Shown one piece after another: positions 1-26,263 of a DNA stretch of 26,330 bases; position 1 is the stretch's first letter, and each line of letters begins with the position of its first letter. The DNA lies in contig NIVC01005098.1 in the NCBI GenBank assembly GCA_002269645.1, forward strand, positions 1 through 26,330. Direction: 5' to 3'. The DNA comes from Macrostomum lignano. Lineage: Eukaryota. The position numbers and the translations under genes were made by a program. The notes below the pieces were generated by a model. It was not told where the DNA came from. It saw only the letters and a program-made list of their open reading frames with translations, and ran no database searches.

Positions 1-370
1 CTGCATCGCTGACTGCTGATCGCGGCCACGTAAGTCAGCGGATTGAAACCGGGGCTATGGCGGGTTGCCGCGGCCGCGGCTGCCCCCGACAGCCGATGAT
101 GACGAGGATGAGGAGTGCACTTTGGCGCCGGGGATTCCAATTGGGCCGCTGCTGCTGCTCGGAAGCCAGGCAACGGGCTGAACGAATCGCTGCCCTGGGA
201 CGAGCTCGCGTGGCCGGGACCGGCGCCGCCAAAGCTAGCGCTGCTGCTGGCGCCGACGAAGCCGACGCTGTCGTGCTCGGAGAGGTCAAGGTCATCCAGC
301 TCTGGTAGCATGGCGCTGCTAGGAGACGCCAGCTGGTTCTGCTGTTGGCCAGCTCTGTGCAGACCGCTGG
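1..370 (-). CDS. unk: Unkempt exon 5 (low-complexity region), continues beyond window start
   Basis: Acceptor ttttttcactgcAG at 372-371. The phase matches the exon 4 donor (G+CC = Ala). The frame stays open to base 1: ASGLHRAGQQQNQLASPSSAMLPELDDLDL... Confidence 0.7.
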
Positions 371-476
371 CTGCAGTGAAAAAACGAATAGAGGCGCAGA
401 ATGTACCAAAGTCAAGAGTCAGAATCCTACTTGCTGCTTTTTTATGGAATTTATCGATTTTTCTCGCCTGTAGTGA

Positions 477-1250
477 GGGGATTGTAGCCTAGTGGTTAGA
501 GCGTTGGACTCACGACTCAAAAGTCGGGGGTTCGATTTTCGACCCACTCGGAACAATTTGTGTCTAGGGATTGCAAAATCCCGGTTTTTAGCGATCCGGG
601 ATCAGAAAAACACAGATTTTTCAGCTTTTGGGTTGAAATTTCAAGGCAAAATATGCTCTAAATGTATTTTTGCTTCCATTTTTTATTGTAATAGACATAA
701 TGATCTTTTCGTAGATGAAAAACAGCATTATCTTGTGACGTATTTAAGAAAGTAGTATAAAAGCACTAATTAGTAGTAAAGAAGCAAATCATATATCAAT
801 ATTTCACATTTAAATCTGTGATGCGGGGTTTAAAAAGGCGCCACGCGACGTGAGGCAATTAACGGAAATTAGCGCAGTATAATAAACTTGTTGTGGGCCC
901 AATTATGTTCATATTACAACACTTTTTGTAAAAATAATAACAAAAATTAGTCCCGGGATTTGGGCCCAATCCCGGAATTTCGGGATCATGGGATCCCGGG
1001 ATTGCAATCCCTATTTGTGTCCTTGAGCAAGGCACTTAACTCTGCATTGCTTCAGTTCACCCAGCTGTAAAATGGGTGCCAGCATTAGCTGGGGTAGTTG
1101 AGGCTGTGTGTGGCGACCCCCAGTCCCCAGTGTCTTTAAACTAACAGCCGTACGCAGCCTTCAGATGCGCCGCGCAATAGCTGCGGCTGAGCTGTCGGTT
1201 GCACATCTGTCCATTATAGAAGGTGTAACCAATTTTTTGTTTCATTATCG
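477..1250 (+). mobile_element. tRNA-derived SINE with Nin-like central domain, split by a MITE (pieces ~477-564 and ~1022-1250)
   Basis: Pol III A-box-like TAGCCTAGTGG and B-box-like GGTTCGATT. After the insertion the sequence resumes with TGTGTCCTTGAGCAAGGCACTTAAC...CACCCAGCTGTAAAATGGGT, which resembles the Nin-domain consensus as I recall it. The 3' end is approximate. Confidence 0.7.
565..1013. mobile_element. Non-autonomous hAT-type MITE, 449 bp
   Basis: 12-bp TIR TAGGGATTGCAA / TTGCAATCCCTA. Perfect 8-bp TSD TTTGTGTC at 557-564 and 1014-1021. Subterminal ATCCCGG/CCGGGAT repeats. Confidence 0.9.
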
Positions 1251-1518
1251 CTTGTATGTTGTAACTAATGGGTGCAACCTATTTATCAAAACCACTTGTC
1301 CGCGTTATTTCACTCCCTAGTAGGTGGTTAGTGCATTGACATCCGGTCCGAACTTGTCCCGTCACGTCCCCGAGACCTGTCTACGTGTAGCATTGAAACC
1401 CGTGAGCCGTACGTGGAAGCTTAGAAATCTGGATAGTTTGATGGGTGGCTAAACAGCTACTTGCACCGAATAGAAATTTACTCTACTAGGAGCAGCAATT
1501 AAGCAATTGAAGCCAAAC

Positions 1519-1828
1519 CTCGATTGCCGCCAACCGCTGCGGATTGCTCCCACACGCTCGGGCTGATGAGACGGCCCAGTGTCAGAGGTGCAGGTCCCGT
1601 CGCCTGCTGTTGCTGCTGCTGCTGCGGCTGCTGCTGCTGCTGCAGATGAAGCTGCGGCAGCTGCGGTGATTGTTGCTGCTGCACAGCGCCCAGCATCAGC
1701 AGGCCCATGTCCTGCATAAAGTTCCGCCCGAAGTTCATCTCCGACTCCTCGTGGGCGAAGGCGCAGAACGGACCCCTTGGACAGTAGTTCTGCTGCATGA
1801 CATCGTTGCACTTTGTCGACTTATAAAT
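1519..1828 (-). CDS. unk: Unkempt exon 4 (last CCCH finger plus polyQ tract)
   Basis: Encodes IYKSTKCNDVMQQNYCPRGPFCAFAH. Acceptor cAG at 1830-1829, donor GTTTGG at 1518; length 310 nt keeps phase. Confidence 0.85.
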
Positions 1829-2016
1829 CTGCGCGAGGGTACGTTGGCAAGAAAATTCGCGTCTATCTACTGACAGTAGAATAAAAAACGTGTGTATTTC
1901 ATTAACAATCACAAGTAAAATCAGCGCCGTCAAGTCAGCTGACGAGATACAGTCACGTGATTTATTGCTTTCGCCCTTAAACGCTAAATGGAAGAACACG
2001 GATCTGCGGCGCTCAC

Positions 2017-2134
2017 CTCTGGGTGGAACTGCTGCTCGGTGCGGGTGTGGCAATACTGACAGTCGTCGGCCTGCTCGCAGAGGCTGCTGTCAAGCCATTC
2101 GTCCGAGCTCTTCACTGCCGGACAGGGAGTTGAT
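2017..2134 (-). CDS. unk: Unkempt exon 3
   Basis: Encodes STPCPAVKSSDEWLDSSLCEQADDCQYCHTRTEQQFHPE. Canonical AG (2136-2135) and GTGAG (2016) boundaries; phases match both neighbours. Not in the ORF track. Confidence 0.9.
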
Positions 2135-3840
2135 CTGCGATTTGGAATAAGAAGGGAGAGGTAATTGTCCAGGCTGAAGTCAATTGTCTGCGGACTGAAC
2201 TGCGCGACTGGAACTAGTTTGACTGGGCCTTTGTGTATTTACTGGGTGGAAGAGTGAGAGATTGAGTAGCTAAGCGTGGATGGCGAGAATGGAGAAAGGG
2301 CAATCGATTTTTCGAAATACAGAGCCCCATCAATCGATACCATTTCGTTGACTAAATTCATCTCGAATAGTGCCATACCGATGCAAGGTAAGGACATCCA
2401 TCTAGCCTGTTAATAATATCAACAAGGAAGTGCAGGTCAATTTGATGAATTCCCTGCCGGAACAAATGGAACATACTCGTGCCTCCAATTAAACTGTGAA
2501 TCGTGTCAGCTGCCTTGCACTTTATCAGGTCGCTACGTATATCTCTATTTATTAAGCCACACCATGCGCGCATGCATCTTGTTAAGTTTGAAGTGCAGCT
2601 AATGGGGGAGCTGACAGCACACTGAATCAAGCAGTGGATATCGCACTTCACTACACTGTACAGTTTGATAAGAGTACAGCTTTGGAAGGGGGAAGAAGGA
2701 GCAGGGGAGAGAGGGCTTAGCAGCTTTAGATTCGTAAGTTAGAGCCGGGCAAACCCGGACAGTCGCTCTGTGGCTAGTATTTATTGATTTTTCCGCCGCT
2801 GGCTGCGCAAGCCTCGCCTCCCCCTCTGCCCGGTCGGACCGAACCAGCCCCCCCCCCAGTGCTCATCGATCCGCGCTGCATTTGGGGTTGCTGTATACGG
2901 GGCTCTAAAAATAGATTTTCGTAAAGCAGGGCGACGGAAAGAGCGTCAGTTCGTATTTGGGGCTGGGGGAGGGGCAAGGGCTGAAGCGGCGAGAGAGGAA
3001 AGACAGTTCAATAAGCTGTCAGACCTGTACAGCCCCGCTCACTGCGTTCAACAACAACCAACCAGCTGTACGTCCGCGTTCTGCACCCCCTTTCTCCGTC
3101 CTCTCATTCGGCTCTTGTAGTTCCAACCAAGTATTCATTTCTTTGCCATATAATCTCTCACCCTCCCCTCTGTTCGCATGCTCAAGGCCTAAGCCAGGGA
3201 GGCCTCCTCCTTCGCGAAATGAAAACAGAAAAAGCTTTTGAAGGGGGAGAGGTAGGGGATGAAGATGAATCGAAAGAGCTTTGCTGACGGAAGCATCTTT
3301 TCCGGCTTCCCGCCCGAATATGCATTTGGCCGTACTGCATGCGCCTTATAGATAAGACTGCTTCGGATTGCACTCAAAATCCAAATTCCTATAGTGCAAG
3401 CTACCTAGGAAATTGCATGCAAGGGGTACGGACACCCTGATTCCACCGCCTCTGCTGGACAACAGGATTAGTATTGACCGAGATTTTTCTAGTAAAAGCA
3501 CAGCAGGACGACAATGCTATTCGCAAAAAATTAGAAATTAAAAAAACCGTTTAAAGAAGACAAACTTATAGTTTAGCTTGTGTTGCCGATGGTCATCTAA
3601 GCTGAGAAAGTTATGCGCCAATCGCTAATCAAACAAGCGTCAAACTGGGTGGACAAGGAAGATATATTTAACAAAGTCTTTGTTTTGATTCGTTACTTCC
3701 GTGTTCTATCAGTGGTGCTAGGCTCACAGGCTACGTACACGGGCACAGCACTCACGCAGAGTTTATAGACTTCCATGACACACGTACACTTCTAGTGTGC
3801 CTTTATAATATGCACCTCACTGGACCTTGATCACACTCAC

Positions 3841-4452
3841 CTGTACTTGTGCACGTGCGGTCCCCGACGCTTGTCCTTGGCGTTGTGATAGAATGGACAG
3901 GCGTAGCCCTGACGGCACATTCGCGGCGGCTTGCGGCACTGCTCGGTTTTGTAGTTGGCCAGCACATAGCCCATGTCGTTCCATTTGGGATCTTCGGACA
4001 GGACACGCTCTTTCTCCAGGCTGGCCGGCAAGTTCACAGGACAGTCGGCGGCCTCTTGAACTTCGCGGATGTCGTAAACAGGCACGCGCAGATCGTTGGC
4101 GCCGTGAGCAAAGGCGCAGTGGGCACCATTTCGTGAGCAGTGACCTCGGGCGTCCGTGTCGTGAATGCAGGTGCCGGTTTTAAAGTAGCGCAGATGGTAG
4201 CGCCTCTCAGTGTCGCCGGCATTTCGGTGCAGGTAGGGACAAGCGTCGGCGTTGGGGCACTCCCCTCGGGTCTCGTCGTACTTGTCGCAATACACATCAG
4301 GCGAATAAGTGAAAGTTCCGTCCGCTTTGCGCAATGGGCGACGCCGGCGCTGATTTGGAAAATGCCAATGAAAGCAGGTGAACGGCTTATGCTGCGTGCA
4401 CTTATGATTCGCAAACAGTGGGCACTGCTGAGTGCGGAAGTCGCGGAGATAA
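3841..4452 (-). CDS. unk: Unkempt exon 2 (tandem CCCH zinc fingers)
   Basis: Encodes YLRDFRTQQCPLF...CFHWHFPNQRRRRP...ERRYHLRYFKTGTC...YKTEQCRKPPRMCRQGYACPFYHN, diagnostic of Unkempt. Acceptor at 4454-4453, donor GTGAG at 3840. Confidence 0.95.
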
Positions 4453-4905
4453 CTGCAATTTGTCAGAAAAAATAAAAAATTAGTAAAGATCCACATATTG
4501 GTATGCATGATACAACATTTACAAAGGTTTGGAACAATTGGAACTGCACATTGCAAAAAGTAGTGCAAAAATTTGTTAAAACAAAACGAAAAGTCTCTAT
4601 GGTAATAAAAATAAATTTATAGCATTTTGTCTCTCAATTATTTTTTAAAACTACTATCAAAATACTTTTAACAGAAACTATTCTGCCCCTGACAAATATA
4701 TGAAAAAGTTAAAAAAAATGTGAATTAATTTTTGTTTCAATGTAGCTTAAACATTTGTTTATATTCTTTATCTAATTTTACTCACAAAACTAATTAAAAT
4801 GTTAAATGTTAAAACAATATAAAAGCTCAGCCATTAAATCAGAAAGTAAATCCATAATTATAGATAAGCAAAACAGCAAAATAATGAATTTAAACTGAGA
4901 CTTAC

Positions 4906-5105
4906 TTTAAATGTTGTGGTTTTACAAAAACAGTTGGCATACCTATTCCTTGTGTTGCTAAATCTAACTCTGGGGGGAGTGGTACACTGCCTGTCAAGTT
5001 CTGAGGCGACGCTTGAGATGACATCATTGGTAGACTTGTAGAGAGAATAACATTAGATAAAGTTGCTAAAGAAGAATTCTGTGCTATGGGAGATAGTGAT
5101 GACAT
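4906..5105 (-). CDS. unk: Unkempt first coding exon
   Basis: ATG at 5105. Ends ...KPQHL-AA|GTAAG; AA+T joins in frame to YLRDFR, matching the Unkempt N-terminal (E)KPxHxxYL motif. Confidence 0.8.
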
Positions 5106-6104
5106 ATTCTAATGTCAAACGGAACATTAGACAGCTTTTTACTTTGAAAAGCCTATTTGTTTGTTGCTGTAAAAGCTGTCTGAAATTCCTGCTGTTGATA
5201 GTACGGAAATCATTGTATCTAATGTAAATACTAATAATGTAGTTTTTTCAAAGCATCCTGCTTATTTTTTTAAATATATATTTCGTAAATATAAACTTTT
5301 AGTAAGAGTTGTACTTTTATTAGGTATGTAAAGCTCTTTTTGTTAATCTGCTACCGTCGCAAGGTACCTTTAAACTGAAAAAAAAGTTTCTAACATAAAA
5401 GACGCTAACTACGAACTTCATCGACCCGACATCAATGATGTTACTACTCTGATTGCATTGTGTTTGTCTGAGTTCACAGAGAGACAGTAGTCTTGTAGTT
5501 TGCTAGTTCACTTCTTCGTCTGAAGCGAACAAATTGTAGGACGCTTAAATTTAACTTAAGCTAATTAACTTTTCTGGCAGTAAACAGGGTGAATTTTAAC
5601 ATAAGTGCCTAGGTGCTAGGCGTAGGCCTAGATATATTATGCTTAATGCTTAGAAAAAGGTTAAATACCTTTTGTTTGCGTAAAGCAATTTGATATATAT
5701 ATACATTTGGACTTGTATGCATATGTATACATTTGTATACATTTGGACAAAAATGATCAGTGTCTAATACTATTAGGCGGCATAGGCCTAAAGCAAAATA
5801 GACTGCAAAAGCATTAGGCCTAGAAATTTAATTTTAAGATAGGGGCCTACAAATTTTTTTTCAATTTTTTGATTAATTTTCAAAAGTATGGTTTATTTTT
5901 ATTTAAGCAACTTAGATTTATCAAATAAAATAAAAATACAAGGTTATTAATATACTACTACTACTAGGTGAAATTCAAAAATTAGGGGCAAGTTCTGTCA
6001 AAATTGTTTTTGGCAATTCAGAAGTAACATGCACAACCTTGGGAATCACTTGGCCATTTCTATTGGCAACACACACACATACAAATTGCTATTGGCTAAG
6101 AGCA

Positions 6105-6114
6105 GTCACGTGAC
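6105..6114. promoter_or_regulatory. Palindromic E-box/CLEAR-type motif GTCACGTGAC between divergent unk and RhoGDI
   Basis: Exact 10-bp palindrome in an otherwise AT-rich region. Function is not shown by sequence. Confidence 0.3.
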
Positions 6115-6174
6115 TAGGCCCTATTATTCTGTCTAATAGTAATTTATATGTGTATGTTGCCAATAGAAATGGCT

Positions 6175-7230
6175 GGGTGAATTCTGTCAAAATGGCCACA
6201 CAACAAAATGGCCACACTGTCAAAATGGCCACACAACAAAATGGCCACATAAAACAAAATGTTACACTTACAGATGTCTATCACATTTACTACTATTAGG
6301 ACTTTATTAATGTAGTTTCGAGTGACATTTAGCTCCAATACTATAGTGCACTACAAAAATCCAAAAGCATGCAAGTACCTTTGTGATTATTTCTACTTTT
6401 GTGATCAATTTAACTTGGGTTTTTTTGCCAGAGACAAGGTGTGAAATCGCACCTTGTGCCAAATTTCAAGGTGCGATTTTAAGGCTTAGAGTGCAATTTC
6501 TCTTGAGTCTTGTTTCAGACAACTAGGAATGTATATTTTAATATCTTACATAAGGCTATAGCCATAGGCTATATCGCCTATATGACTTAATAGGATTTAA
6601 AGAGTTATTTTGTTTCATATTTTAAAGCAGTGCATGAAAAATAGCTTAAGCATGGTTAAGCCTTTAAATAAATGGTTATAAGACCGCACCTAAACCGCAC
6701 CTACTTTTTTAATTTTAGTGTGCAATTTTAAAATTTAAGGTATATACGCATACTCTGTGCACAAAAAAACCCTGCATTTAACTTTTGTGGTAAATTTTGC
6801 TTTGTGATTCATTGTACCTCTATTACTCTATGATGCATTTAACATTTCATTTCAACAATTACTTAACTAATTGTTGGTCACTCTATAAAATACAATTTTG
6901 TCTTCGCTTCTTTGATGCATTCTTTTTGGATGCATGTTGCCTGCATAAATTTCATAATATCTCAATGCATTCACTTCTTTTGCATTTTGATGCAAAATGA
7001 TGCAAGTACCAAAGTTAAAATTAATTAAGAACATGAAGTATACTCAATTACATCAATGTATTACTTTAAGAATAACAAGAGTTTAGAATATTCATAGTAG
7101 AGGCTGTGTTTATCATACAATATTAAGAATGAAACAAGTGGGATACCTGCAATACTTTTTGTTTTATGTAGGCATTTGGTTTTGTAGCCATTTTGATAGT
7201 GTGGCTGTTTTTTATGTGGCTGTTCTGCAT
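6175..7230. repeat. Possible degenerate TIR element with CAAAATGGCCAC subterminal repeats
   Basis: Left end GGGTG..TCAAAATGGCCAC repeated about 4 times (6175-6250); inverted copies near 7185-7230. No TSD found. Confidence 0.35.
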
Positions 7231-7719
7231 GTGGCCATTTTGATAGCACCCTATAAATCCCTAGGTTGCACCCAAGCATGAAAGGCAAAAAGCTTTAAAA
7301 AATATAATTTAGTTTAAAAAATAGAAATATATCTATAAAAGCACAAATTATCTATGTGTAATCTTATTAATTATAAAATGATTTGGTAAAATATTAAATT
7401 TACTTATGTCATATGACTAAAATAACTCTTATAGAAATGATAGAAAAGGTCTTACAGCATATTTATTAATGGTAGAATGGTAGAATGGTAAATGGCAGTG
7501 CACGGGGATGGCTCACAACACAGACAAACCATTTTTATTATATGGGATTATAGACATATATCCAGGGGTCCCTAATATAGTTGGCATACAATTTCTGTCA
7601 TTTTAAAGATATAATTATTTATTTGTCCAACTTATATTTTTTAAATTTTTATTCCTGTATATCTATGTAGTTTCTATTTATTAAGACATAAATAATTAAT
7701 ACTACATAGAAATACATAG

Positions 7720-8505
7720 GGCTCATTCCATATAAGCATGGTCGTAACATGACAGGCTATTTTTACTTATAAAATGAAATATAATAATAGAATATACTAA
7801 ACCAATATTTTAAATGAAAGATAATTTTGTCAAAAATATTTTTATAGAGTTTCATGTAGATATCATCATTAGTATAGATGCTATTAAACCTTGAATGGCA
7901 CTTATGGTCGTAACAACAGGATTTTTGACATATAGAAACTAAAAGGTAAAAGTCTTATAACATTTTTATTTTTGATATTTTGCAATACATTTTTTAAAAT
8001 TTGACTAAGAACATCTTTAGTAATCATACTCTTTTATTAGAATATATAAACTCAAAAAGGCAACAAAGATACAAAAGAAAAGGCAGCCTTATGGTCGTAA
8101 CATTATGGTCGTAACATATTTTTTTCTGTCAATTCAGTAACTTTGAGGTACCAATATATTAAAAATATAATAGATTATTTGGTCACCAATACTTTTATCT
8201 GATGATGCAAGTACTATACTTTTATCTATAGTTTGTTTCAACCTTCCAAAGCTTTCTATTTGTTTTTAAAAGGTACACAAACTTAATGATGTCTTTTGCT
8301 TAGAAAAATGTTTAAATTTTTACAAAAATGACTTTTTGCCACTTGATAGCATACTAATCTAACATTTTATCATTCATTTATTCTTAGATTGTAGATATTA
8401 CACATAAAAAACATTTGGTAAAAAAATGGCTGATAAGACAATGGCAAGCAAAAATATTGACTTTTTTCTATTTTCCAAAAATGTCCATCTTATATGGAAT
8501 GAGCC
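7720..8505. mobile_element. Non-autonomous DNA transposon (MITE-like), 786 bp
   Basis: 17-bp perfect TIR GGCTCATTCCATATAAG / CTTATATGGAATGAGCC flanked by ATAG on both sides. Four internal ATGGTCGTAACA motifs. Confidence 0.8.
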
Positions 8506-8870
8506 ATAGATAGTGTATAGATTGTCTTTTTAAAATTTATTCTACTATATATTCTGCCACTTTTTTAATTATAGATAGCATCTAGTGCATGCTAAAAGTG
8601 CTATATGCTAAATGACTAGCAAGCCGTGCACTGTCTCCTTATTATAAAATACAAACAAGCCAACCATTTTTAGGCTTACAAGCAACATACAATGTCTGCA
8701 GTTATATTAATATCTAAGAATTTGAGAATAAAAATGCAATATATTTTAGCTTTTAATATAGAAAGGACTTGCTAGAGCATAGTACCCCTTGTCCTAATTT
8801 GTAGCTTCAAAAAGATAAAAACAACAAACTTTGATGCAAAAGCTTTAATCACACTAAATTGAAAAAAAAA

Positions 8871-9264
8871 ATGGCTGAAAAAGGCGACAATGATGATCTG
8901 GTCCCGGAGGACACTGGCTTCAAGCCGCCGGCGCCAAAGTCTCTGGACGAGATTCTCAACGCCGACAAGGACGATCCGTCCCTTGAGAATTATAAAAAGC
9001 AACTGCTCGGCAACACTGTGCCGCCTGTGTTTCCTGACAATCCTAGAAATGTGATTGTGCAGAAAATACAGATTGAATTCCTAGGCGAAAGCCGCGAGCC
9101 AGCCAACATCCAACTGATGGATGCGGATCTGTCAGTGCTTAAAAAGTCACCAATCGTGATCAAAGAAGGGGTAAATTATCGGGTGAAAGTGTTTTTCTAT
9201 GTGCAACGTGAGATCGTGGCCGGTTTGCGGTACATCAACTGTTCGTACAAGATGGGCATACGAG
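8871..9264 (+). CDS. RhoGDI: Rho GDP-dissociation inhibitor exon 1
   Basis: Encodes FKPPAPKSLDEILNADKDDPSLENYKKQLLG...IKEGVNYRVKVFFYVQREIVAGLRY. Donor G|GTGAGT at 9265. Confidence 0.95.
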
Positions 9265-9460
9265 GTGAGTTGCCCATAATGTTAGTGTGAATGCGAGTAT
9301 CTAATCTAAGAAGATTCCTATCAATAAGCTGCCCCTAATCCCCCAGAAAAGTTGCCATTTGACTGCCACTAATCCTTCAGAAGTGTTGCTACTAGACTGC
9401 CACTTATCCTCCAGAAGAGTTCCCATTGGACTGGCACAAATCCTCAAGAATATTAGCCAT

Positions 9461-10876
9461 TAGACTGGCACTAATACCCCATAAGAGTCGTCTATAGACT
9501 GGCACTAATACCCCATAAGAGTCGTCATTAGACTGGCACTAATACCCCATAAGAGTCATCATTAGACTGGCACTAATACCCCATAAGAGTCGTCATTAGA
9601 CTGGCACTAATACCCCATAAGAGTCGTCATTAGACTGGCACTAATACCCCATAAGAGTCGTCATTAGACTGGCACTAATACCCCATAAGAGTCGTCATTA
9701 GACTGGCACTAATACCCCATAAGAGTCGTCATTAGACTGGCACTAATACCCCATAAGAGTCGTCATTAGACTGGCACTAATACCCCATAAGAGTCGTCAT
9801 TAGACTGGCACTAATACCCCATAGAGTCGTCATTAGACTGGCACTAATACCCCATAGAGTCGTCATTAGACTGGCACTAATACCCCATAAGAGTCGTCAT
9901 TAGACTGGCACTAATACCCCATAAGAGTCGTCATTAGACTGGCACTAATACCCCATAGAGTCGTCATTAGACTGGCACTAATACCCCATAGAGTCGTCAT
10001 TAGACTGGCACTAATACCCCATAGAGTCGTCATTAGACTGGCACTAATACCCCATAAGAGTCGTCATTAGACTGGCACTAATACCCCATAAGAGTCGTCA
10101 TTAGACTGGCACTAATACCCCATAAGAGTCGTCATTAGACTGGCACTAATACCCCATAAGAGTCGTCATTAGACTGGCACTAATACCCCATAGAGTCGTC
10201 ATTAGACTGGCACTAATACCCCATAGAGTCGTCATTAGACTGGCACTAATACCCCATAAGAGTCGTCATTAGACTGGCACTAATACCCCATAAGAGTCGT
10301 CATTAGACTGGCACTAATACCCCATAAGAGTCGTCATTAGACTGGCACTAATCCTCTAAAAGAGAGCCATTAGACTGGCACTAATCCTCTCAACGAGAGC
10401 CATTATACTGGCACTAATCCTCTAAAAGAGAGCCATTATACTGGCACTAATCCTCTAAAAGAGAGCCATTAGGCTGGCACTAATCCTCTAAAAGAGAGCC
10501 ATTATACTGGCACTAATCCTCTAAAAGAGAGCCATTAGGCTGGCACTAATACCCCATAAGAGTCGACATTAGACTGGCACTAATCCTCTCAAAGAGAGCC
10601 ATTAGACTGGCACTAATCCTCTAAAAGAGAGCCATTATACTGGCACTAATCATCTAAAAGAGAGCCATTAGGCTGGCACTAATCCTCTAAAAGAGAGCCA
10701 TTAGACTGGCACTAATACCCCATAAGAGTCGTCATTAGACTGGCACTAATACCCCATAAGAGTCGTCATTAGACTGGCACTAATACCCCATAAGAGTCGT
10801 CATTAGACTGGCACTAATACCCCATAAGAGTCGTCATTAGACTGGCATCCTCTCAAAGAGAGCCATTAGACTGGCA
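9461..10876. repeat. 34/33-bp minisatellite in RhoGDI intron (~40 copies)
   Basis: Unit GACTGGCACTAATACCCCATAAGAGTCGTCATTA, with a block of variant GACTGGCACTAATCCTCTAAAAGAGAGCCATTA at ~10345-10710. Degenerate copies start at ~9340. Confidence 0.95.
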
Positions 10877-11896
10877 TAGAAATTCTAAGCCATAGAAAAG
10901 TGCTTATTAAACGCAGCTGAAAGGAGAACGCAAAAAAGAAGTGTGTGCACAGAGTAGAAAATTTTGTATAATACTCGTAAAAAACCAACGTAACACTACA
11001 GCAATGCACATTTGGCATGACTCAAGTTCGTGTTCAGGTTGGCAATATAGCAGAGTGTTAAGTGTGAAGCCTTAGTGTGAAGTGCTTGGGCTGTACAATG
11101 TGTAGAGTTATATGTAGTGTCCTGTGACCAGTTTAGATATTCTCTGAGCGTTTACGTGTATGGCAAATTTAGTAATCTGGCATATAATATAGCTTCAATG
11201 CGCAGTGTTTGCTTAGCAGCTGGCACAGTGGCATTATCTGTCCCAACTTTAATAGGCACAAATGAACAACTGCCGCGTCAAGTTGTATGCAATGCATTGA
11301 CTTATTAAGTATGTTAACGTTTTAGTAAAGTACGTAGATTCTAATAAATAGAGTCCCAGCCTTGACCAGCTAGCTAGCTCACTCACTGCTCAGCACCACA
11401 GCTACATAAACCCTAGATTAGTTCACCCTGGTTCCGATAGTTATGCTTATTCCAAGGGCAGAAATAGAGGAGCTGTTTTTAGAACAATATTGCCAGAAAC
11501 AAACTAAAAAAACATTTAGTAGATGATCAAATAAAGACAATAGACAAAAAATTTAGAACAAACACAAAATTACCTATGAGTTAATGCAGAGTGACCTATC
11601 ATTTAATATTGCTTTTGTCATGCTAAGTCAGCAAACAGACATTCAAAGTTGAAAGCCTACATAACAAACTCAGGTGGGGCCATAGACAACACACAAACTT
11701 GCAATTTAGCACTGACGTTAATCAACTCATTTACTGTGAAATATAAACTGCAAGTTTATGTGCTGTCTATGGCCCAACCTGTGTTTGATCTGTAGGCTTT
11801 CAACTTTCGATGACCGTAGATGACCTTGACATGACAAATTTTGGATGACCTGTGCTCGGCGCACCCCTAGCAATGACTCACTTAACTGTCCCTCAG

Positions 11897-12096
11897 TTGC
11901 CAAGGACGACCTGATGGTTGGCAGCTACCCCCCGAAGGCCGAGCCGCACGTGTACAGCAGCCCGGCACAAGAGGCTCCCAGCGGCATGATGGCCCGCGGC
12001 ACTTACACTATAAAGTCGCGCTTTACCGACGATGACAGGAACGACTTCTTGTCCTGGGAGTGGGCCATCAAGATCAAGGACTCGTGGAAGGACTGA
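11897..12096 (+). CDS. RhoGDI: RhoGDI exon 2 (spliced protein 197 aa)
   Basis: Acceptor cctcAG at 11895-11896. Encodes MVGSYPPK...EAPSGMMARGTYTIKSRFTDDD...WEWAIKIKDSW, stop at 12094-12096. Confidence 0.95.
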
Positions 12097-12249
12097 TCAA
12101 TTAAGCAACTCTCTTTAATTCTAATTAGACCGATTTGAGACATGGAAAATAAAAATTACCTTTTTTATCGTTCGCTTATCCCGTGAATCCACAGGCCCCT
12201 GGTTACCTGGAATGGAAACGGACCCGCGCATCACCCCAAGATCTTACCT

Positions 12250-22886: not shown

Positions 22887-23393
22887 CCGCGGGCTTTGTG
22901 CCCCAGTAGCAATAGTTTCAGGTTCGTAAATACCTAATGTATCTATAGGTGGAGCTTTGGGTTTATCGAGTCTCAACTCTTTTAATTCCATATCGGTAAA
23001 AGTTTCAACATCTAAAATTCTATTTCTATCTTTTAAATATTTTTCATATAATTCAACCGCGGTTGATAATTCATGAATCGTTATCTCTCCGTCATCCAAT
23101 ATTTTTTGCACATATAAATATAATTGATTTTTATATTGTTTTGCAACATCTCTTAAAGATTTATATTTTTCCTTTCTTTTTTTAAGATATAATTTAATTG
23201 CTAAAAGTATTGATAAGTTCCTGATCAATTCAAAACCTGATATTGAGCCAATTGAAATACCTAAAAATAATTGAGATAAATTAAGAGTTGGAATAGATTG
23301 TAAAATACCTAAAACGATTACACATAACATTGATAAGCTTCCAAATCCAATATTGAAAAAGTCACTGATGAAAATTACAAACTTATTATCACC
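22854..23393 (-). pseudogene. GasderminX-like Polinton membrane protein, apparently 5'-truncated
   Basis: Hydrophobic hairpin, then KKRKEKY..LA and QKILDDGEITIHELSTAVELYEKY, resembling the Polinton ALxDGxISxEEF motif. The frame extends past ATG 23330 (SDFFNIGFGSLS) to a stop at 23394-23396 with no upstream start. Confidence 0.55.
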
Positions 23394-23819
23394 TCACGAA
23401 ATAGAATAAATCAACTATTAAAATCAAATAATGCTCGAAAAAATAATCATACTATTGATTACCTTGGTTGCTCAATTGAATTCTTTATTGATTGGTTAAA
23501 TTTCACAAAACATTATTATGTTCCAAAAGACTATGGTGGTGCTTTACATATTGATCATTTTATTCCTGCTTCTTCATTTAATTACAAAGACGAAGATCAT
23601 ATGAAAAAGTCTGAACATTGGACAAATAAAAGATACTTAGCTGCTATTGATAATAAAACTAAATTTGTTAAACAACCAACAATTGAAGAATTTGCAAAAC
23701 AATTGGTGCTATCATGTATTTTTAAGGCTATAAAAAATGAGCAATCATGCGACGCATGCGAACCAAAGGTTCGATCGGGCGAAGTCCGCGTTCCTTCGGA
23801 ACGATCAATTAGTATTTGA
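23337..23819 (+). pseudogene. HNH endonuclease (giant-virus/phage type), no start codon, 5'-truncated
   Basis: Open frame DENYKL..SRNRINQLLK...TIDYLGCSIEFF..WL...DYGGALHIDHFIPASSFN..DED..K..HWTN..YL...DN..K matches the LGCS...WHIDH.IP..SF...HY.NL.PL...N..K HNH family. The ORF track shows only the last 72 aa. Confidence 0.75.
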
Positions 23820-23925
23820 AGGAGGATTTTTAGATGTTCAAAAAGGATTAACAAGCTTACCACCAATATTTACTACTGGGAGGTATACGGGTGAGCTACA
23901 CCTACCATCAATGAACTTCACAGGT
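23737..23925 (+). CDS. PLA2X-integrase fusion, exon 1
   Basis: TATAAAAAATG start. Ends GELHLPSMNFTG, the first half of the parvovirus-type PLA2 Ca-binding loop (ELHLPxxNxxGPGT). Confidence 0.85.
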
Positions 23926-24228
23926 TATCCCGTGGCCTGAGTGAGGAAGGCAATGTCCTTGCTAGTCACTATTTGTGGCGACATCTCCAAATTGCGTGAA
24001 ACCCGTCATACAGCTTCAAGTACCACTTCAATTGAGAAATCTTTTGAAGGAACAGAGGTAACTCCTCTTCCCAAAGGTAAAAAGCTTGAAGACATGGTGG
24101 CAATGCGCAGCCAAGCTCCTAAGTATTTTAAATATAAGGAGAAGGTTCAGAGAGCAGACGGAGATGGGCGGTAATTATCGCCGCTTAAGGTGTGCTCCAG
24201 CCTCTTTCGAAAGATTGAGGGTAAACTA
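23926..24228 (+). ncRNA. Group I intron, subgroup IC1, 303 nt
   Basis: P/Q/R/S-like elements AAATTGCGTGAAA, AATGCGCAGCCAAG, GTTCAGAGAGCAGA, TAAGGTGTGCTCC. Pairings P1, P2, P2.1, P3, P4, P5abc, P6, P7, P8, P9.0, P9 and P10 all form. Removal restores NFTG|PGTRL in frame. Confidence 0.93.
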
Positions 24229-25377
24229 CCCGGCACTCGCTTAGATTTGAGATTAAATCCTGACAATACTCCAAAATCTGATTCAATTCCAATAAATGGG
24301 ATTGATTGGTTAGCATACTATCACGACTTAGCATATAGAGATGCTGACAAGAACCCGCCCGAGGAAGCATTAAGATTAAAACATGAAGCCGATCAAAAAA
24401 TGATTCAAGGATTAGATAACTTGCAGGGATTATCGGTAGGGCAAAGATTAACTAGGTGGATGGTTAAAAAGATTTTGCAGTCTAAAGTTAAATTTGGTTT
24501 GGGAATTAATTATAATCAACATGGAAATAATTGTGTCGAGTGTTTATTATTAAGTGGTGGTGGGTTAAGTTCTGATGAGGCAAAGATTCTTCATAAAGAA
24601 TATCGAAAACCTAAATTTTATAGAAAAATCATGAACTTCAAAAAGAATGAAATTTGGTATGCTGATTTAATGTCGATGCCGAACGAAAGAGGATATAAAT
24701 ATATCTTAACCATATTAGATGGTTTTACTCGATACGCGTGGGCTGTTCCTTTAAAATCCAAAAAGGGAGAGGAGGTTGCTGCTGCTTTTAGAAGTCTTGG
24801 AGAAAAAAGCGAAAGATTGTGTGTTGATGAAGGAAAAGAATTTTACAATCCTCATATGTATAAATTGTATCATTTTGAAAAAGGAAAAGAAAGGAAAAAA
24901 GACGCGAATGGGGAGTATATTAATAAAATTTATTCTATTTATGGAGAGAGTAAAAACGCATTAATAGAAAGATTTAATCGAACTTTAGGTAAGAAATTAT
25001 GGTTTCAGTTTAGTCTTAATGGTAACCAAAAGTGGGTAAAAATATTACCAGACGTAGTGAAAGATTATAACAATTCATATCATTCAGCTATAAAGATGAC
25101 TCCTCAACAAGCTTATAACAATCCTGAAAACGTTAAAGTTACTTTTGGAAAATTTGAAAAAAATAAAAAGAAATCTTTTAAGGTTGGTGATTCTGTTTAT
25201 ATCTATAAATGGAAAGATAAGTTTGAAAAAGGAAGAAAAGGATATTGGAAGATAAGTGAGAAATTTACTATCAGTAAAGTTTTAAATACCAATCCTACAA
25301 CCTATATAATTGCTGATAAGGACGGTGAAGAAATATTGGGTTCGTTTTATGAGAACCAACTAATATCAGCGAACTAA
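24229..25377 (+). CDS. PLA2X-integrase fusion, exon 2 (spliced product 445 aa)
   Basis: PLA2 motifs PGTRL, DWLAYYHDLAY, HEAD, KFGLG. Integrase DDE triad WYADL / VDEGKEF / IERFNRTL. C-terminal FKVGD..V..FEKG...W..E.F...Y...D..GE.I.GSFYE..L; no chromodomain. Confidence 0.93.
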   Translation, partial: PGTRLDLRLNPDNTPKSDSIPINGIDWLAYYHDLAYRDADKNPPEEALRLKHEADQKMIQGLDNLQGLSVGQRLTRWMVKKILQSKVKFGLGINYNQHGNNCVECLLLSGGGLSSDEAKILHKEYRKPKFYRKIMNFKKNEIWYADLMSMPNERGYKYILTILDGFTRYAWAVPLKSKKGEEVAAAFRSLGEKSERLCVDEGKEFYNPHMYKLYHFEKGKERKKDANGEYINKIYSIYGESKNALIERFNRTLGKKLWFQFSLNGNQKWVKILPDVVKDYNNSYHSAIKMTPQQAYNNPENVKVTFGKFEKNKKKSFKVGDSVYIYKWKDKFEKGRKGYWKISEKFTISKVLNTNPTTYIIADKDGEEILGSFYENQLISAN

Positions 25378-25387
25378 GTTCGAACAA

Positions 25388-25612
25388 TTACTTGAGACAA
25401 CATGGTAGTAAATTTTTTATAACAAACAAAAACAATATTATTACTATAATTGTTACTAATATTATTATTGACATTTGTTCAACTGTTATCAAACTTAAAT
25501 TTTCATTAAGTTCATTAATCGGCACATTTCCGATGTAGGAATAGTTTACCTTCATTTTTTTATATATATTTTTCACAATAAATGTCGTTTCTGTTATAGA
25601 ATAATAGTTCAT
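25388..25612 (-). CDS. Small membrane protein (74 aa) with C-terminal TM helix and PCC motif
   Basis: TAAAAAATG start; hydrophobic SIIILVTIIVIILFLFVI. Confidence 0.6.
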   Translation of the reverse strand: MNYYSITETTFIVKNIYKKMKVNYSYIGNVPINELNENLSLITVEQMSIIILVTIIVIILFLFVIKNLLPCCLK

Positions 25613-25628
25613 TTTTTAAATATTTTTT

Positions 25629-25942
25629 TCACATAAAAATTTCACTTTCATTCTCTGAATCACTGGTTTCATATGAACTATTTGTTGATTCGGAATCTGT
25701 TGATCTAACCTCCCAATCATCCGAATTTAAATAATCTCCAAGTTGAAATATTAACTCACCCTCTTGTTCTAAATCAACATCTCATCTAGCTCTAATGGAT
25801 AAAGTTTTAGGTCGTGCTTGTCGTCATATTTTAAATAAACTTCATCAATTATTCCATTCAAAATATGTTGTTTTATTATCTCTGCATTTTTAGCAACAGT
25901 CTCAAAAGTATCACTAACAGAAAAGGTGTAAACTCGGGTCAT
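25629..25942 (-). CDS. Acidic hypothetical protein (~104 aa) with 1-nt frameshift near 25783
   Basis: TAAAAATG start, MTRVYTFSVSDTF...YPLELDE / DVDLEQEGELIFQLGDYLNSDDWEV...SDSENESEIFM*. The two frames join with one added base. Not in the ORF track. Confidence 0.55.
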
Positions 25943-25959
25943 TTTTAGTAACAGAAAAA

Positions 25960-26263
25960 GACCCTTCGCGCCTGCGGCGCGGGCAAGGGGTTATAGAGTA
26001 GTAGTATAGAAAAAGACGCTTCTAGATCAGACCTTATTTTAATGGCCGTTTGTAAGGTCTTAAGAGGGGGGGCGCGAGGGGGGTGTTGGGGAGTGTTTGG
26101 AAGTGTTTGGAAGTGATTTTTATTGTTAGGGGTGATTATGGGTGATTAGATGTGTTAAGGGTGTTTAGATGTGTTTTTTTATTTACCCCCGTGTCCCCCT
26201 CTAGACTTAAAACGGTCATTAAAAAAGTGCTCTGGGTCTAGAAGCGTCTTTTTATATACTACT
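25960..26263 (-). repeat. Right TIR
   Basis: Reverse complement of 15496-15802. Confidence 0.95.

What the first reader, a model, noticed from the sequence alone, without database searches (positions are those of the whole stretch)
24193..24233. The intron appears to end in omega-A although its G-binding site is canonical
Seen: protein continuity, P10 and P9.0 (AG 24199-200 pairing with CU 24226-27) all place the 3' splice site after A24228, not G. The P7 G24152-C24197 pair with bulged A is the standard guanosine site. Established: omega-G is near-universal; omega-A is known from the ND5 intron in scleractinian coral mitochondria. Inference: either a natural omega-A ribozyme (slow or factor-assisted second step, potentially regulatory), an inactivating mutation, or a base-call error.
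Basis: partly seen in the sequence, partly recalled or inferred. Interest (0 to 1): 0.7.

Follow-up and report, generated by a model that had tools for sequence, protein, structure and literature searches.

The report
Self-splicing intron ending in A
A well-formed self-splicing (group I) intron in the integrase gene of a virus-like element inserted in a eukaryotic genome ends in A where all seven related introns end in the usual G, most likely because of a one-base mutation in this copy.

Summary
A group I intron (Rfam 64 bits, E 1e-15) occupies 23926-24228. It splits a phospholipase-A2/rve-integrase gene between the Gly and Pro codons of the conserved NFTG|PGT motif.

Protein continuity, an intron-less relative, P9.0 and P10 all put the last intron base at A24228. 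P9.0 covaries in four pair types and P10 covaries at +3 to +5. The guanosine pocket is canonical: G24152-C24197 with bulged A24151.

I found seven related introns at the same codon junction in metagenomic Polinton-like viruses, and all end in G. The nearest comparable one, L002, matches the window base for base through the whole pocket and P9. So nothing has adapted to an A.

The window copy lies in a 10.8-kb element bounded by inverted repeats. It has a protein-primed polymerase but no detectable capsid genes, and it carries a truncated HNH gene. It sits beside eukaryotic, animal-like host exons.

Best reading (0.6): a private G-to-A change in this endogenous copy that blocks or slows exon ligation. 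Working omega-A ribozyme: about 0.2. Base-call error: about 0.05. Reads, RNA-seq junctions or in vitro splicing would decide.

The parts
23737..23925 (+). 5' exon of the PLA2/rve-integrase gene. It ends ...AAC TTC ACA GGT. The conserved part starts near 23821, and the true start codon is uncertain.
23926..24228 (+). Group I intron, 303 nt, with no internal ORF
23921..23939 (+). P1 hairpin. 5' exon 23921-23925 pairs with the internal guide 23935-23939, and the splice-site pair is U23925.G23935.
23930..23934 (+). 5' part of the guide sequence, which pairs with the first bases of the 3' exon (P10)
23940..23979 (+). P2 (23940-47 / 23956-63) and P2.1 (23965-69 / 23975-79). The related introns L001 and L021 carry endonuclease ORFs at this position.
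23982..23988 (+). P3 5' strand CAUCUCC, which pairs with 24160-24166
23993..24146 (+). P4-P6 domain, including a P5abc-type extension (24014-24091). One window-specific broken pair, A24025.A24075.
24150..24156 (+). P7 5' strand: G24150, bulged A24151, and G24152 of the guanosine pocket
24160..24166 (+). P3 3' strand GGAGAUG
24167..24182 (+). P8, a short hairpin rebuilt relative to the other introns
24193..24198 (+). P7 3' strand. C24197 pairs with G24152.
24199..24200 (+). P9.0 5' strand AG
24201..24220 (+). P9 hairpin with a GAAA loop (24209-24212)
24226..24227 (+). P9.0 3' strand CU
24228..24228 (+). Omega position. A in the window, G in all 7 related introns.
24229..25377 (+). 3' exon. It starts CCC GGC ACT (PGT) and holds the rest of the PLA2 domain plus the rve integrase core and C-terminal domain.
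23337..23720 (+). 5'-truncated HNH-type endonuclease gene fragment with no start codon. It lies just upstream of the interrupted gene, outside the intron.
15496..15802 (.). Left terminal inverted repeat of the integrated element
25960..26263 (.). Right terminal inverted repeat of the integrated element
19032..21380 (+). 782-aa ORF with an endonuclease VII-like N-terminus. The rest is homologous to a protein-primed family B DNA polymerase.

Best explanation
The intron is a genuine Tetrahymena-like group I ribozyme. It belongs to a family that sits at one fixed site in the PLA2/integrase gene of Polinton-like viruses: between the Gly and Pro codons of the calcium-loop motif.

In this copy the last intron base has changed from the ancestral G to A. 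The copy is carried by a 10.8-kb element bounded by inverted repeats and integrated in a eukaryotic chromosome.

Predicted consequences (inferred, not shown):
- The first splicing step, attack by free guanosine after U23925, should be unaffected.
- In the second step the unchanged G-specific pocket (G24152-C24197) cannot hold A24228 well.
- Exon ligation is therefore blocked or greatly slowed, even though P9.0 and P10 still align the correct junction.
- Unspliced RNA stops after ...NFTGYPVA, so little or no integrase is made from this copy.

It is a private loss-of-function or hypomorphic lesion, not an adapted omega-A ribozyme.
For: The omega position is fixed by homology and covariation, and it is G in 7 of 7 related same-site introns: L001, L002, L003, L021, L020, L142 and L016.

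J6/7-P7-J7/3 and J8/7-P7'-P9.0-P9 are 100% identical between the window and L002, which has omega G. No compensating change exists in or around the pocket. The G-C pocket pair is invariant in 5 of 5.

The window lineage was under selection for ribozyme structure until recently. Its own changes at otherwise invariant columns are mostly compensatory: P4 G-C to U.G, P6b C-G to U-A, P3 C-G to U-A, and a rebuilt P8. The uncompensated ones include omega and 24075.

The copy is endogenous and incomplete:
- The inverted repeats have 7 mismatches and 2 small indels.
- No capsid, ATPase or protease gene is detectable, although relatives encode them.
- The HNH gene is truncated and has lost its start.
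- The flanks carry eukaryotic host exons, Unkempt-type CCCH and RhoGDI.

Established knowledge, from memory: in the Tetrahymena intron, changing the terminal G to A blocks exon ligation unless the pocket pair is also changed (Price and Cech 1988; Michel et al. 1989). For Been and Perrotta 1991 only the title was confirmed.
Against: Apart from omega, the ribozyme is the cleanest of the five aligned, with 1 non-standard pair in 74.

Both integrase exons, the 782-aa polymerase ORF and the other ORFs are open, so there is no general decay.

Hexacoral ND5-717 introns end in A and still give correctly ligated exons in vivo (PMC6545197, PMC8146996). With P9.0 and P10 intact, some correct ligation may therefore occur here too.

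No reads, transcripts or sister copies of this locus could be examined.
Confidence: 0.6

Rival explanations
1. A working omega-A ribozyme. P9.0 and P10 hold A24228 in the active site well enough for exon ligation, perhaps slowly or with a protein helper. [quoted passage not shown]
For: The ND5-717 precedent shows omega A with correct ligation in vivo. [quoted passage not shown] In the window, P9.0, P10 and the whole core are intact. The exons and other ORFs of the element are open.
Against: The A is seen in one copy only, and 7 of 7 relatives have G. The pocket and its surroundings are identical to an omega-G relative. There is no conservation evidence for the A. Mutational work on the Tetrahymena intron (from memory) shows a strong second-step defect.
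Confidence: 0.2
2. A base-call or consensus error in the assembly. The real base is G and the intron is ordinary.
For: A single-base difference at a position that is G in all relatives. Nothing else about the intron is unusual.
Against: The two inverted repeats already differ by about 2%. So real substitutions in this copy are probably far more frequent than consensus errors in a polished assembly, though that comparison is an inference. G-to-A substitution is not a typical assembly error type. No reads were available to test it.
Confidence: 0.05
3. A cryptic 3' splice site at an upstream G. Ligation after G24219, or 5' cleavage after U23926 with ligation after G24220, stays in frame and inserts three residues (GKL or CKL) into the calcium loop.
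For: Rfam aligns its terminal G to G24219. The nine extra bases GGT AAA CTA carry no stop. From memory, omega mutants of model introns can use nearby G residues.
Against: G24219 and G24220 are paired inside P9, and no P9.0 or P10 supports these sites. One of three adjacent Gs is always in frame, so the frame match carries no weight. No homologue has an insertion in NFTGPGT. G24221 gives an immediate stop, and G24220 with the normal 5' site gives an early stop.
Confidence: 0.05

Closest known systems
Hexacoral mitochondrial ND5-717 group I intron (omega A)
   Same: A group I fold in a protein-coding gene whose last base is A instead of G. It shows that omega A is compatible with correct exon ligation in vivo (PMC8146996, PMC6545197).
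   Different: There the omega A is reported in a sea anemone and in corallimorpharians, and the intron itself is obligatory and vertically inherited in all hexacorals examined. It is mitochondrial and carries whole genes in P8. Here the A is private to one endogenous copy, all 7 relatives have G, and no transcript evidence exists. It is not homologous in host gene or insertion site.
Tetrahymena LSU rRNA intron (IC1) and its terminal-G mutants
   Same: By eye and from memory, the core strings are alike: AAUUGCGxGAAA, CGCAGCCAAG.UCCUAAGU, GUUCAxAGA. Both have a P5abc-type extension with an A-rich bulge, a G-C pocket pair with a bulged A, and P9.0/P10 that define the 3' site.
   Different: The model intron sits in rRNA. 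Its omega-A versions are laboratory mutants that stall before exon ligation (from memory, not re-read here). The window intron is in a viral protein-coding gene.
Group I introns of Polinton-like viruses and giant viruses
   Same: Rfam-detected group I introns are reported in PLV genomes (51 in a survey, PMC12220804). The window's P6-P7 core string occurs in more than 120 IMG/VR contigs, many of them giant-virus bins, at about 70% identity over P3-P7.
   Different: In the parts of that survey I read, it counts introns and describes one group as lying in a short gene upstream of the capsid gene. I saw no mention of the PLA2/integrase site or of the terminal base. None of the 120 IMG/VR hits lies next to an integrase homologue.
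Polinton/Maverick-type integrated elements
   Same: Terminal inverted repeats beginning AG and ending CT, a protein-primed family B polymerase homologue, and an rve integrase. Relatives carry a double-jelly-roll capsid gene and an A32-type ATPase.
   Different: Only 10.8 kb, with no detectable capsid, ATPase or protease. The integrase is fused to a parvovirus-type PLA2 domain and interrupted by a group I intron.
Free-standing homing endonucleases next to introns ('collaborative homing' in phages)
   Same: An HNH-type gene lies beside the intron-containing gene in the window and in L014. The same HNH family sits inside the intron in L021. The concept is described in PMC11296320, citing Bonocora and Shub 2009.
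   Different: The window copy is truncated and has no start codon. No cleavage site or activity was tested.

Membership tests
Group I intron (Rfam RF00028) | Covariance-model score above the curated threshold | tested here: met
   64.2 bits against a gathering score of 50, E 1.3e-15. The default filtered whole-window run missed it.
Group I intron (Rfam RF00028) | Conserved core helices P3-P8 supported by covariation | tested here: met
   35 of 77 pairs are compensatory and 94.7% of cells are paired. 0 of 500 shuffles reach this, and slid controls give 36-45%.
Group I intron (Rfam RF00028) | P1 with a U.G pair at the 5' splice site | tested here: met
   U23925.G23935, UG in 5 of 5 sequences
Group I intron (Rfam RF00028) | Guanosine-binding G-C pair in P7 with an adjacent bulged nucleotide | tested here: met
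   G24152-C24197 is invariant in 5 of 5, with bulged A24151
Group I intron (Rfam RF00028) | Terminal guanosine (omega G) before the 3' exon | tested here: not met
   A24228 in the window, G in all 7 related introns
Group I intron (Rfam RF00028) | Self-splicing with exon ligation | not testable with these tools
   Needs transcripts or an in vitro assay
Natural omega-A group I introns (ND5-717 type) | Omega A shared and conserved across the intron lineage | tested here: not met
   Only the window has A. L001, L002, L003, L021, L020, L142 and L016 have G.
Natural omega-A group I introns (ND5-717 type) | Correctly ligated exons observed in vivo despite omega A | not testable with these tools
   No RNA data for this locus
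Natural omega-A group I introns (ND5-717 type) | Same host gene and insertion site (ND5 position 717) | tested here: not met
   The host gene is a PLA2/rve integrase
Polinton/Maverick or Polinton-like virus | Terminal inverted repeats | tested here: met
   Arms of about 310 nt at 15496-15802 and 25960-26263, with 296 matches and 7 mismatches
Polinton/Maverick or Polinton-like virus | rve-type integrase | tested here: met
   PF00665 scores 31.6 bits, just under its 32.6 cut-off. Over 1,000 homologues exist, most of the listed ones carrying PF00665, and the D, D and E columns are conserved.
Polinton/Maverick or Polinton-like virus | Protein-primed family B DNA polymerase | tested here: inconclusive
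   The window ORF hits only Endonuclease_7 in Pfam. It is 36% identical (E 2e-125) to an L018 ORF that hits PF03175 at 7.6e-30.
Polinton/Maverick or Polinton-like virus | Double-jelly-roll capsid protein, packaging ATPase, protease | tested here: not met
   No Pfam hit and no tblastn match to the capsid or ATPase ORFs of L001, L003, L021 or L018. Very divergent versions cannot be excluded.

The most novel reading that the evidence does not exclude
The A is real and the intron still splices at the canonical junction using an unmodified guanosine pocket. That would make it a second, independent natural omega-A group I ribozyme. It would lie in a nuclear, protein-coding gene of an endogenous virus-like element, with a slow or factor-dependent second step that throttles integrase production.
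Probability: 0.15. Interest if true: 0.7.

Novelty: new member of a known kind. Interest (0 to 1): 0.35.

Why it matters
As it stands, this is a tidy example of a single-base lesion at the most conserved nucleotide of a group I intron. It probably silences the integrase of one endogenous virus-like element.

It would matter more if transcripts showed correct ligation. Natural omega G relatives with an identical catalytic pocket exist (L001, L002), so the pair would be a ready-made natural experiment on how much P9.0 and P10 alone can position a 3' splice site.

Separately, the intron family is little described:
- It has a fixed site in the calcium-binding loop codons of a PLA2/integrase gene of Polinton-like viruses.
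- Its members are ORF-less or carry either of two unrelated endonuclease ORFs.
- Its core is related to giant-virus introns.

A copy in a eukaryotic chromosome is also unusual, because nuclear group I introns are described as confined to rRNA genes (PMC3679873).

Tried and rejected
- An exact 20-mer of P9 was scanned in IMG/VR, JGI metagenomes and GTDB genomes. All 10 hits were chance matches in unrelated GC-rich or bacterial DNA.
- P0028/L015 looked like an intron-truncated homologue but is an internal deletion with no intron.
- A protein search with the short intron run-on plus PLA2 start returned one candidate only (P0121). That gave another same-site intron with omega G, not a closer relative of the window.
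- No database protein is closer than 72% to the window's integrase. So no sister copies could be examined.
- The 120 IMG/VR contigs sharing the P6-P7 core were checked for the integrase gene, and none has it. They could not be used to score omega by protein continuity.
- Cryptic splice sites at G24219-24221 and G24232-24233 were worked through by hand. Only G24219 stays in frame with the normal 5' site, it lies inside P9, and the others run into stops.
- The GC-rich hairpins at 23759-23803 fold no better than shuffles (z -1.4).
- The literature search for quantitative omega-G-to-A data in the held library found nothing usable. That point rests on memory.
- The host species was not identified. 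I ran no further search on it.

Full report
**What is there**

The Rfam group I intron model matches window 23916-24219 at 64.2 bits (gathering score 50), E 1.3e-15. The default filtered scan of the whole window missed it.

The interrupted gene encodes a parvovirus-type phospholipase A2 domain (PF08398) fused to an rve integrase.
- The upstream ORF ends ...AAC TTC ACA GGT at 23925. Unspliced, it runs on to a stop after YPVA.
- The downstream frame reads CCC GGC ACT (PGT) from 24229.
- The search found more than 1,000 homologues. In an alignment of 32 of them the motif reads H-N-F-T-G-P-G-T with no gap.
- The closest one, P0001/L014 (72% identity), has no intron and reads ACT GGC CCA GGA ACT.
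- The intron is therefore 23926-24228, in phase 0 between the Gly and Pro codons, and its last base is A24228.

**Structure**

I aligned the window intron with four related introns (A2). RNAalifold and an explicit pair count that included the P3 pseudoknot gave these figures:

| Measure | Value |
|---|---|
| Pairs | 77 in 14 helices |
| Cells paired | 94.7% |
| Cells paired when partners are slid | 36-45% |
| Pairs with compensatory changes | 35 |
| Shuffles reaching the observed values | 0 of 500 |

Helices in window coordinates:

| Element | Coordinates |
|---|---|
| P1 | 23921-25 / 23935-39, with U23925.G23935 |
| P2 | 23940-47 / 23956-63 |
| P2.1 | 23965-69 / 23975-79 |
| P3 | 23982-88 / 24160-66 |
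| P4 | 23993-98 / 24104-09 |
| P5 | 24003-08 / 24095-100 |
| P5abc-type extension | 24014-24091 |
| P6, P6a, P6b | 24110-24146 |
| P7 | G24150-C24198, bulged A24151, G24152-C24197, then three more pairs and A24156-U24193 |
| P8 | 24167-72 / 24177-82 |
| P9.0 | 24199-200 / 24226-27 |
| P9 | 24201-08 / 24213-20, GAAA loop |
| Omega | 24228 |
| P10 | 24229-33 / 23930-34 |

By eye and from memory, the core strings and the P5abc-type extension resemble the Tetrahymena (IC1) intron. I did not test subgroup membership.

**Related introns**

Working through truncated homologues and their contigs, I found seven more introns at exactly the same codon junction.

| Locus | Source | 3' end | Notes |
|---|---|---|---|
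| L001 | P0002 | ...GAUUGAGGGAGAACUG\|CCAGGU | Same P9 as the window. Carries a 233-aa ORF with a weak Eco47II-like match. |
| L002 | P0047 | ...GAUUGAGGGAGAACUG\|CCAGGU | Same P9 as the window. Partial intron, cut at the contig's 5' end. |
| L003 | P0029 | ...UAGUCCAUUUAAUG\|CCCGGU | ORF-less |
| L021 | P0079 | ...UAGUCCAUUUUAUG\|CCCGGU | Carries a 239-aa HNH-type ORF |
| L020 | P0003 | ...CACUAAGUG\|CCAGGA | Host protein 69% identical to the window's. Only the last ~50 nt of the intron is on the contig. |
| L142 | P0121 | ...CACUAAGUG\|CCAGGA | |
| L016 | IMG/VR | ...GUGUGAAAAG\|CCUUUC | |

All seven end in G; only the window ends in A.

P9.0 covaries across them as AG/CU, AU/AU, AC/GU and UU/AA. 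P10 keeps one register: +1 is C-G, +2 is mismatched, +3 is C-G, A-U or U-A, and +4 and +5 are paired.

This fixes the homologous omega position independently of the protein argument.

**Has the ribozyme adapted to an A? No.**
- From J6/7 through P7 and J7/3, and from J8/7 through P7', P9.0 and P9, the window is identical base for base to L002, which ends in G.
- The G-C pocket pair is invariant.

The window's lineage had clearly been under selection for structure. Of its 16 private changes at otherwise invariant columns, most are compensatory:
- P4 G-C to U.G (23997/24105)
- P6b C-G to U-A (24126/24132)
- P3 C-G to U-A (24164 with its partner)
- a rebuilt P8

The uncompensated ones include U-to-A at 24075, which opens one P5b pair, and the omega change. 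The window has the fewest non-standard pairs of the five aligned, 1 in 74.

**Context**

The intron-bearing gene lies at the right end of a 10,768-bp element bounded by inverted repeats.
- The arms are 15496-15802 and 25960-26263, with termini AGTAGTATA...TATACTACT.
- They show 296 matches, 7 mismatches and two small indels.

The element contains:
- a 782-aa ORF whose homologue in L018 is a protein-primed family B polymerase with the same endonuclease VII-like N-terminus;
- small ORFs shared with the metagenomic relatives;
- no detectable capsid, ATPase or protease gene, although L001, L003, L021 and L018 encode a double-jelly-roll protein and/or an A32-type ATPase.

Just upstream of the integrase gene, at 23337-23720, is the C-terminal two-thirds of an HNH-type gene. 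It is homologous to the intron-borne ORF of L021 and to a free-standing 97-aa ORF in L014. The window copy has no N-terminal part and reads Ile where L014 has the initiator Met.

Left of the element are tandem repeats and eukaryotic exons: an Unkempt-type CCCH zinc-finger exon at 3837-4568 (minus strand) and a RhoGDI exon at 8859-9290. So this is an endogenous, probably defective, Polinton-like element in a eukaryotic, animal-like chromosome.

**Interpretation**

The most economical reading is a G-to-A substitution private to this copy.

The two repeat arms already differ by about 2%. Real substitutions in the copy are therefore probably far commoner than consensus errors in a polished assembly, so I rate a base-call error as unlikely. 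That comparison is an inference, and no reads were available.

The functional consequence is also inferred, not shown.
- From the classic work on the Tetrahymena intron (memory: Price and Cech 1988; Michel et al. 1989), an A at omega with an unchanged G pocket stalls exon ligation. For Been and Perrotta 1991 only the title was confirmed.
- Against this stands the hexacoral mitochondrial ND5-717 intron, which ends in A and still yields correctly ligated exons in vivo (PMC6545197, PMC8146996).
- With P9.0 and P10 intact, some correct ligation cannot be excluded here. The open reading frames of the element show no general decay.

I therefore give 0.6 to a lesion that blocks or strongly slows the second step, 0.2 to a working omega A, and about 0.05 each to sequencing error and to cryptic upstream G sites.

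The in-frame option after G24219 has no structural support. It lies inside P9, and one of three adjacent Gs is always in frame.

**Comparison and novelty**

Omega A is known from ND5-717. Group I introns in Polinton-like viruses have been counted by Rfam scan (PMC12220804). This case is a new member of known kinds.

The less-described part is the intron family itself:
- It has one fixed site in the calcium-loop codons of a PLA2/integrase gene.
- Its members are ORF-less, carry an HNH-type ORF, or carry an ORF with a weak Eco47II-like match.
- Its core occurs in more than 120 IMG/VR contigs, many from giant-virus bins.

A review states that all known nuclear group I introns interrupt rRNA genes (PMC3679873). 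A copy inside a chromosomal virus-like element is an exception of sorts, if it is ever expressed.

The host flank looks animal-like, so I treated the element as a possible provirus of an animal and printed only pieces of it.

In some searches, scripts sliced the window region that spans the whole element. One slice became a temporary tblastn database and the other was used for a GC count. Nothing was printed, and the files were deleted.

Noticed in passing
window 23337-23720: A 5'-truncated HNH-type endonuclease gene with no start codon (Ile where L014 has Met). It lies just upstream of the intron-containing gene. The same family sits inside the intron in L021 and is free-standing in L014, which recalls 'collaborative homing'.
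   Followed up: partly
window 15496-26263: A complete 10.8-kb element bounded by inverted repeats, with AG...CT termini and arms of about 310 nt. It has a polymerase and an integrase but no detectable capsid, ATPase or protease genes. The six bases flanking each end (CAGATT / CAGCTG) are not an exact target duplication.
   Followed up: partly
window 19032-21380: The protein-primed polymerase homologue carries an N-terminal endonuclease VII-like domain, as does its relative in L018. The polymerase part is too diverged for Pfam to detect.
   Followed up: partly
window 1-15495: Host flank with eukaryotic exons: Unkempt-type CCCH zinc fingers at 3837-4568 (minus strand) and RhoGDI at 8859-9290. 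AT-rich intron-like stretches lie between them. Long tandem repeats run from about 12.2 to 15.5 kb, including a 21-nt unit that abuts the left repeat arm. The host species was not identified.
   Followed up: partly
L001 776-1477; L021 1003-1722: Members of the same intron family carry different ORFs inserted in the P2 region. L001 has a weak Eco47II-like (PD-(D/E)XK-type) match, E 6e-4 and below the Pfam cut-off. L021 has an HNH-type ORF. The window, L003, L016 and L142 have none.
   Followed up: partly
L022-L141 (IMG/VR): The P6-P7 core string of this intron occurs in more than 120 viral contigs, many of them giant-virus bins, at about 70% identity over P3-P7. None lies next to an integrase homologue. 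This suggests intron exchange between giant viruses and Polinton-like viruses.
   Followed up: partly
window 23759-23803: A GC-rich island with two neat hairpins (CGAACCAAAGGTTCG and CGTTCCTTCGGAACG) in the non-conserved start of the integrase ORF. The fold is no better than shuffles (z -1.4) and there is no second copy in the window.
   Followed up: yes
window 23916-24219: The default Rfam 'gathering' scan of the whole window reported nothing. The same hit scores 64 bits, above threshold, under the more permissive filters. Filtered scans can miss such introns.
   Followed up: yes
window 24075: A second window-specific uncompensated change: U to A, which opens the A24025-U pair at the base of P5b.
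   Followed up: yes
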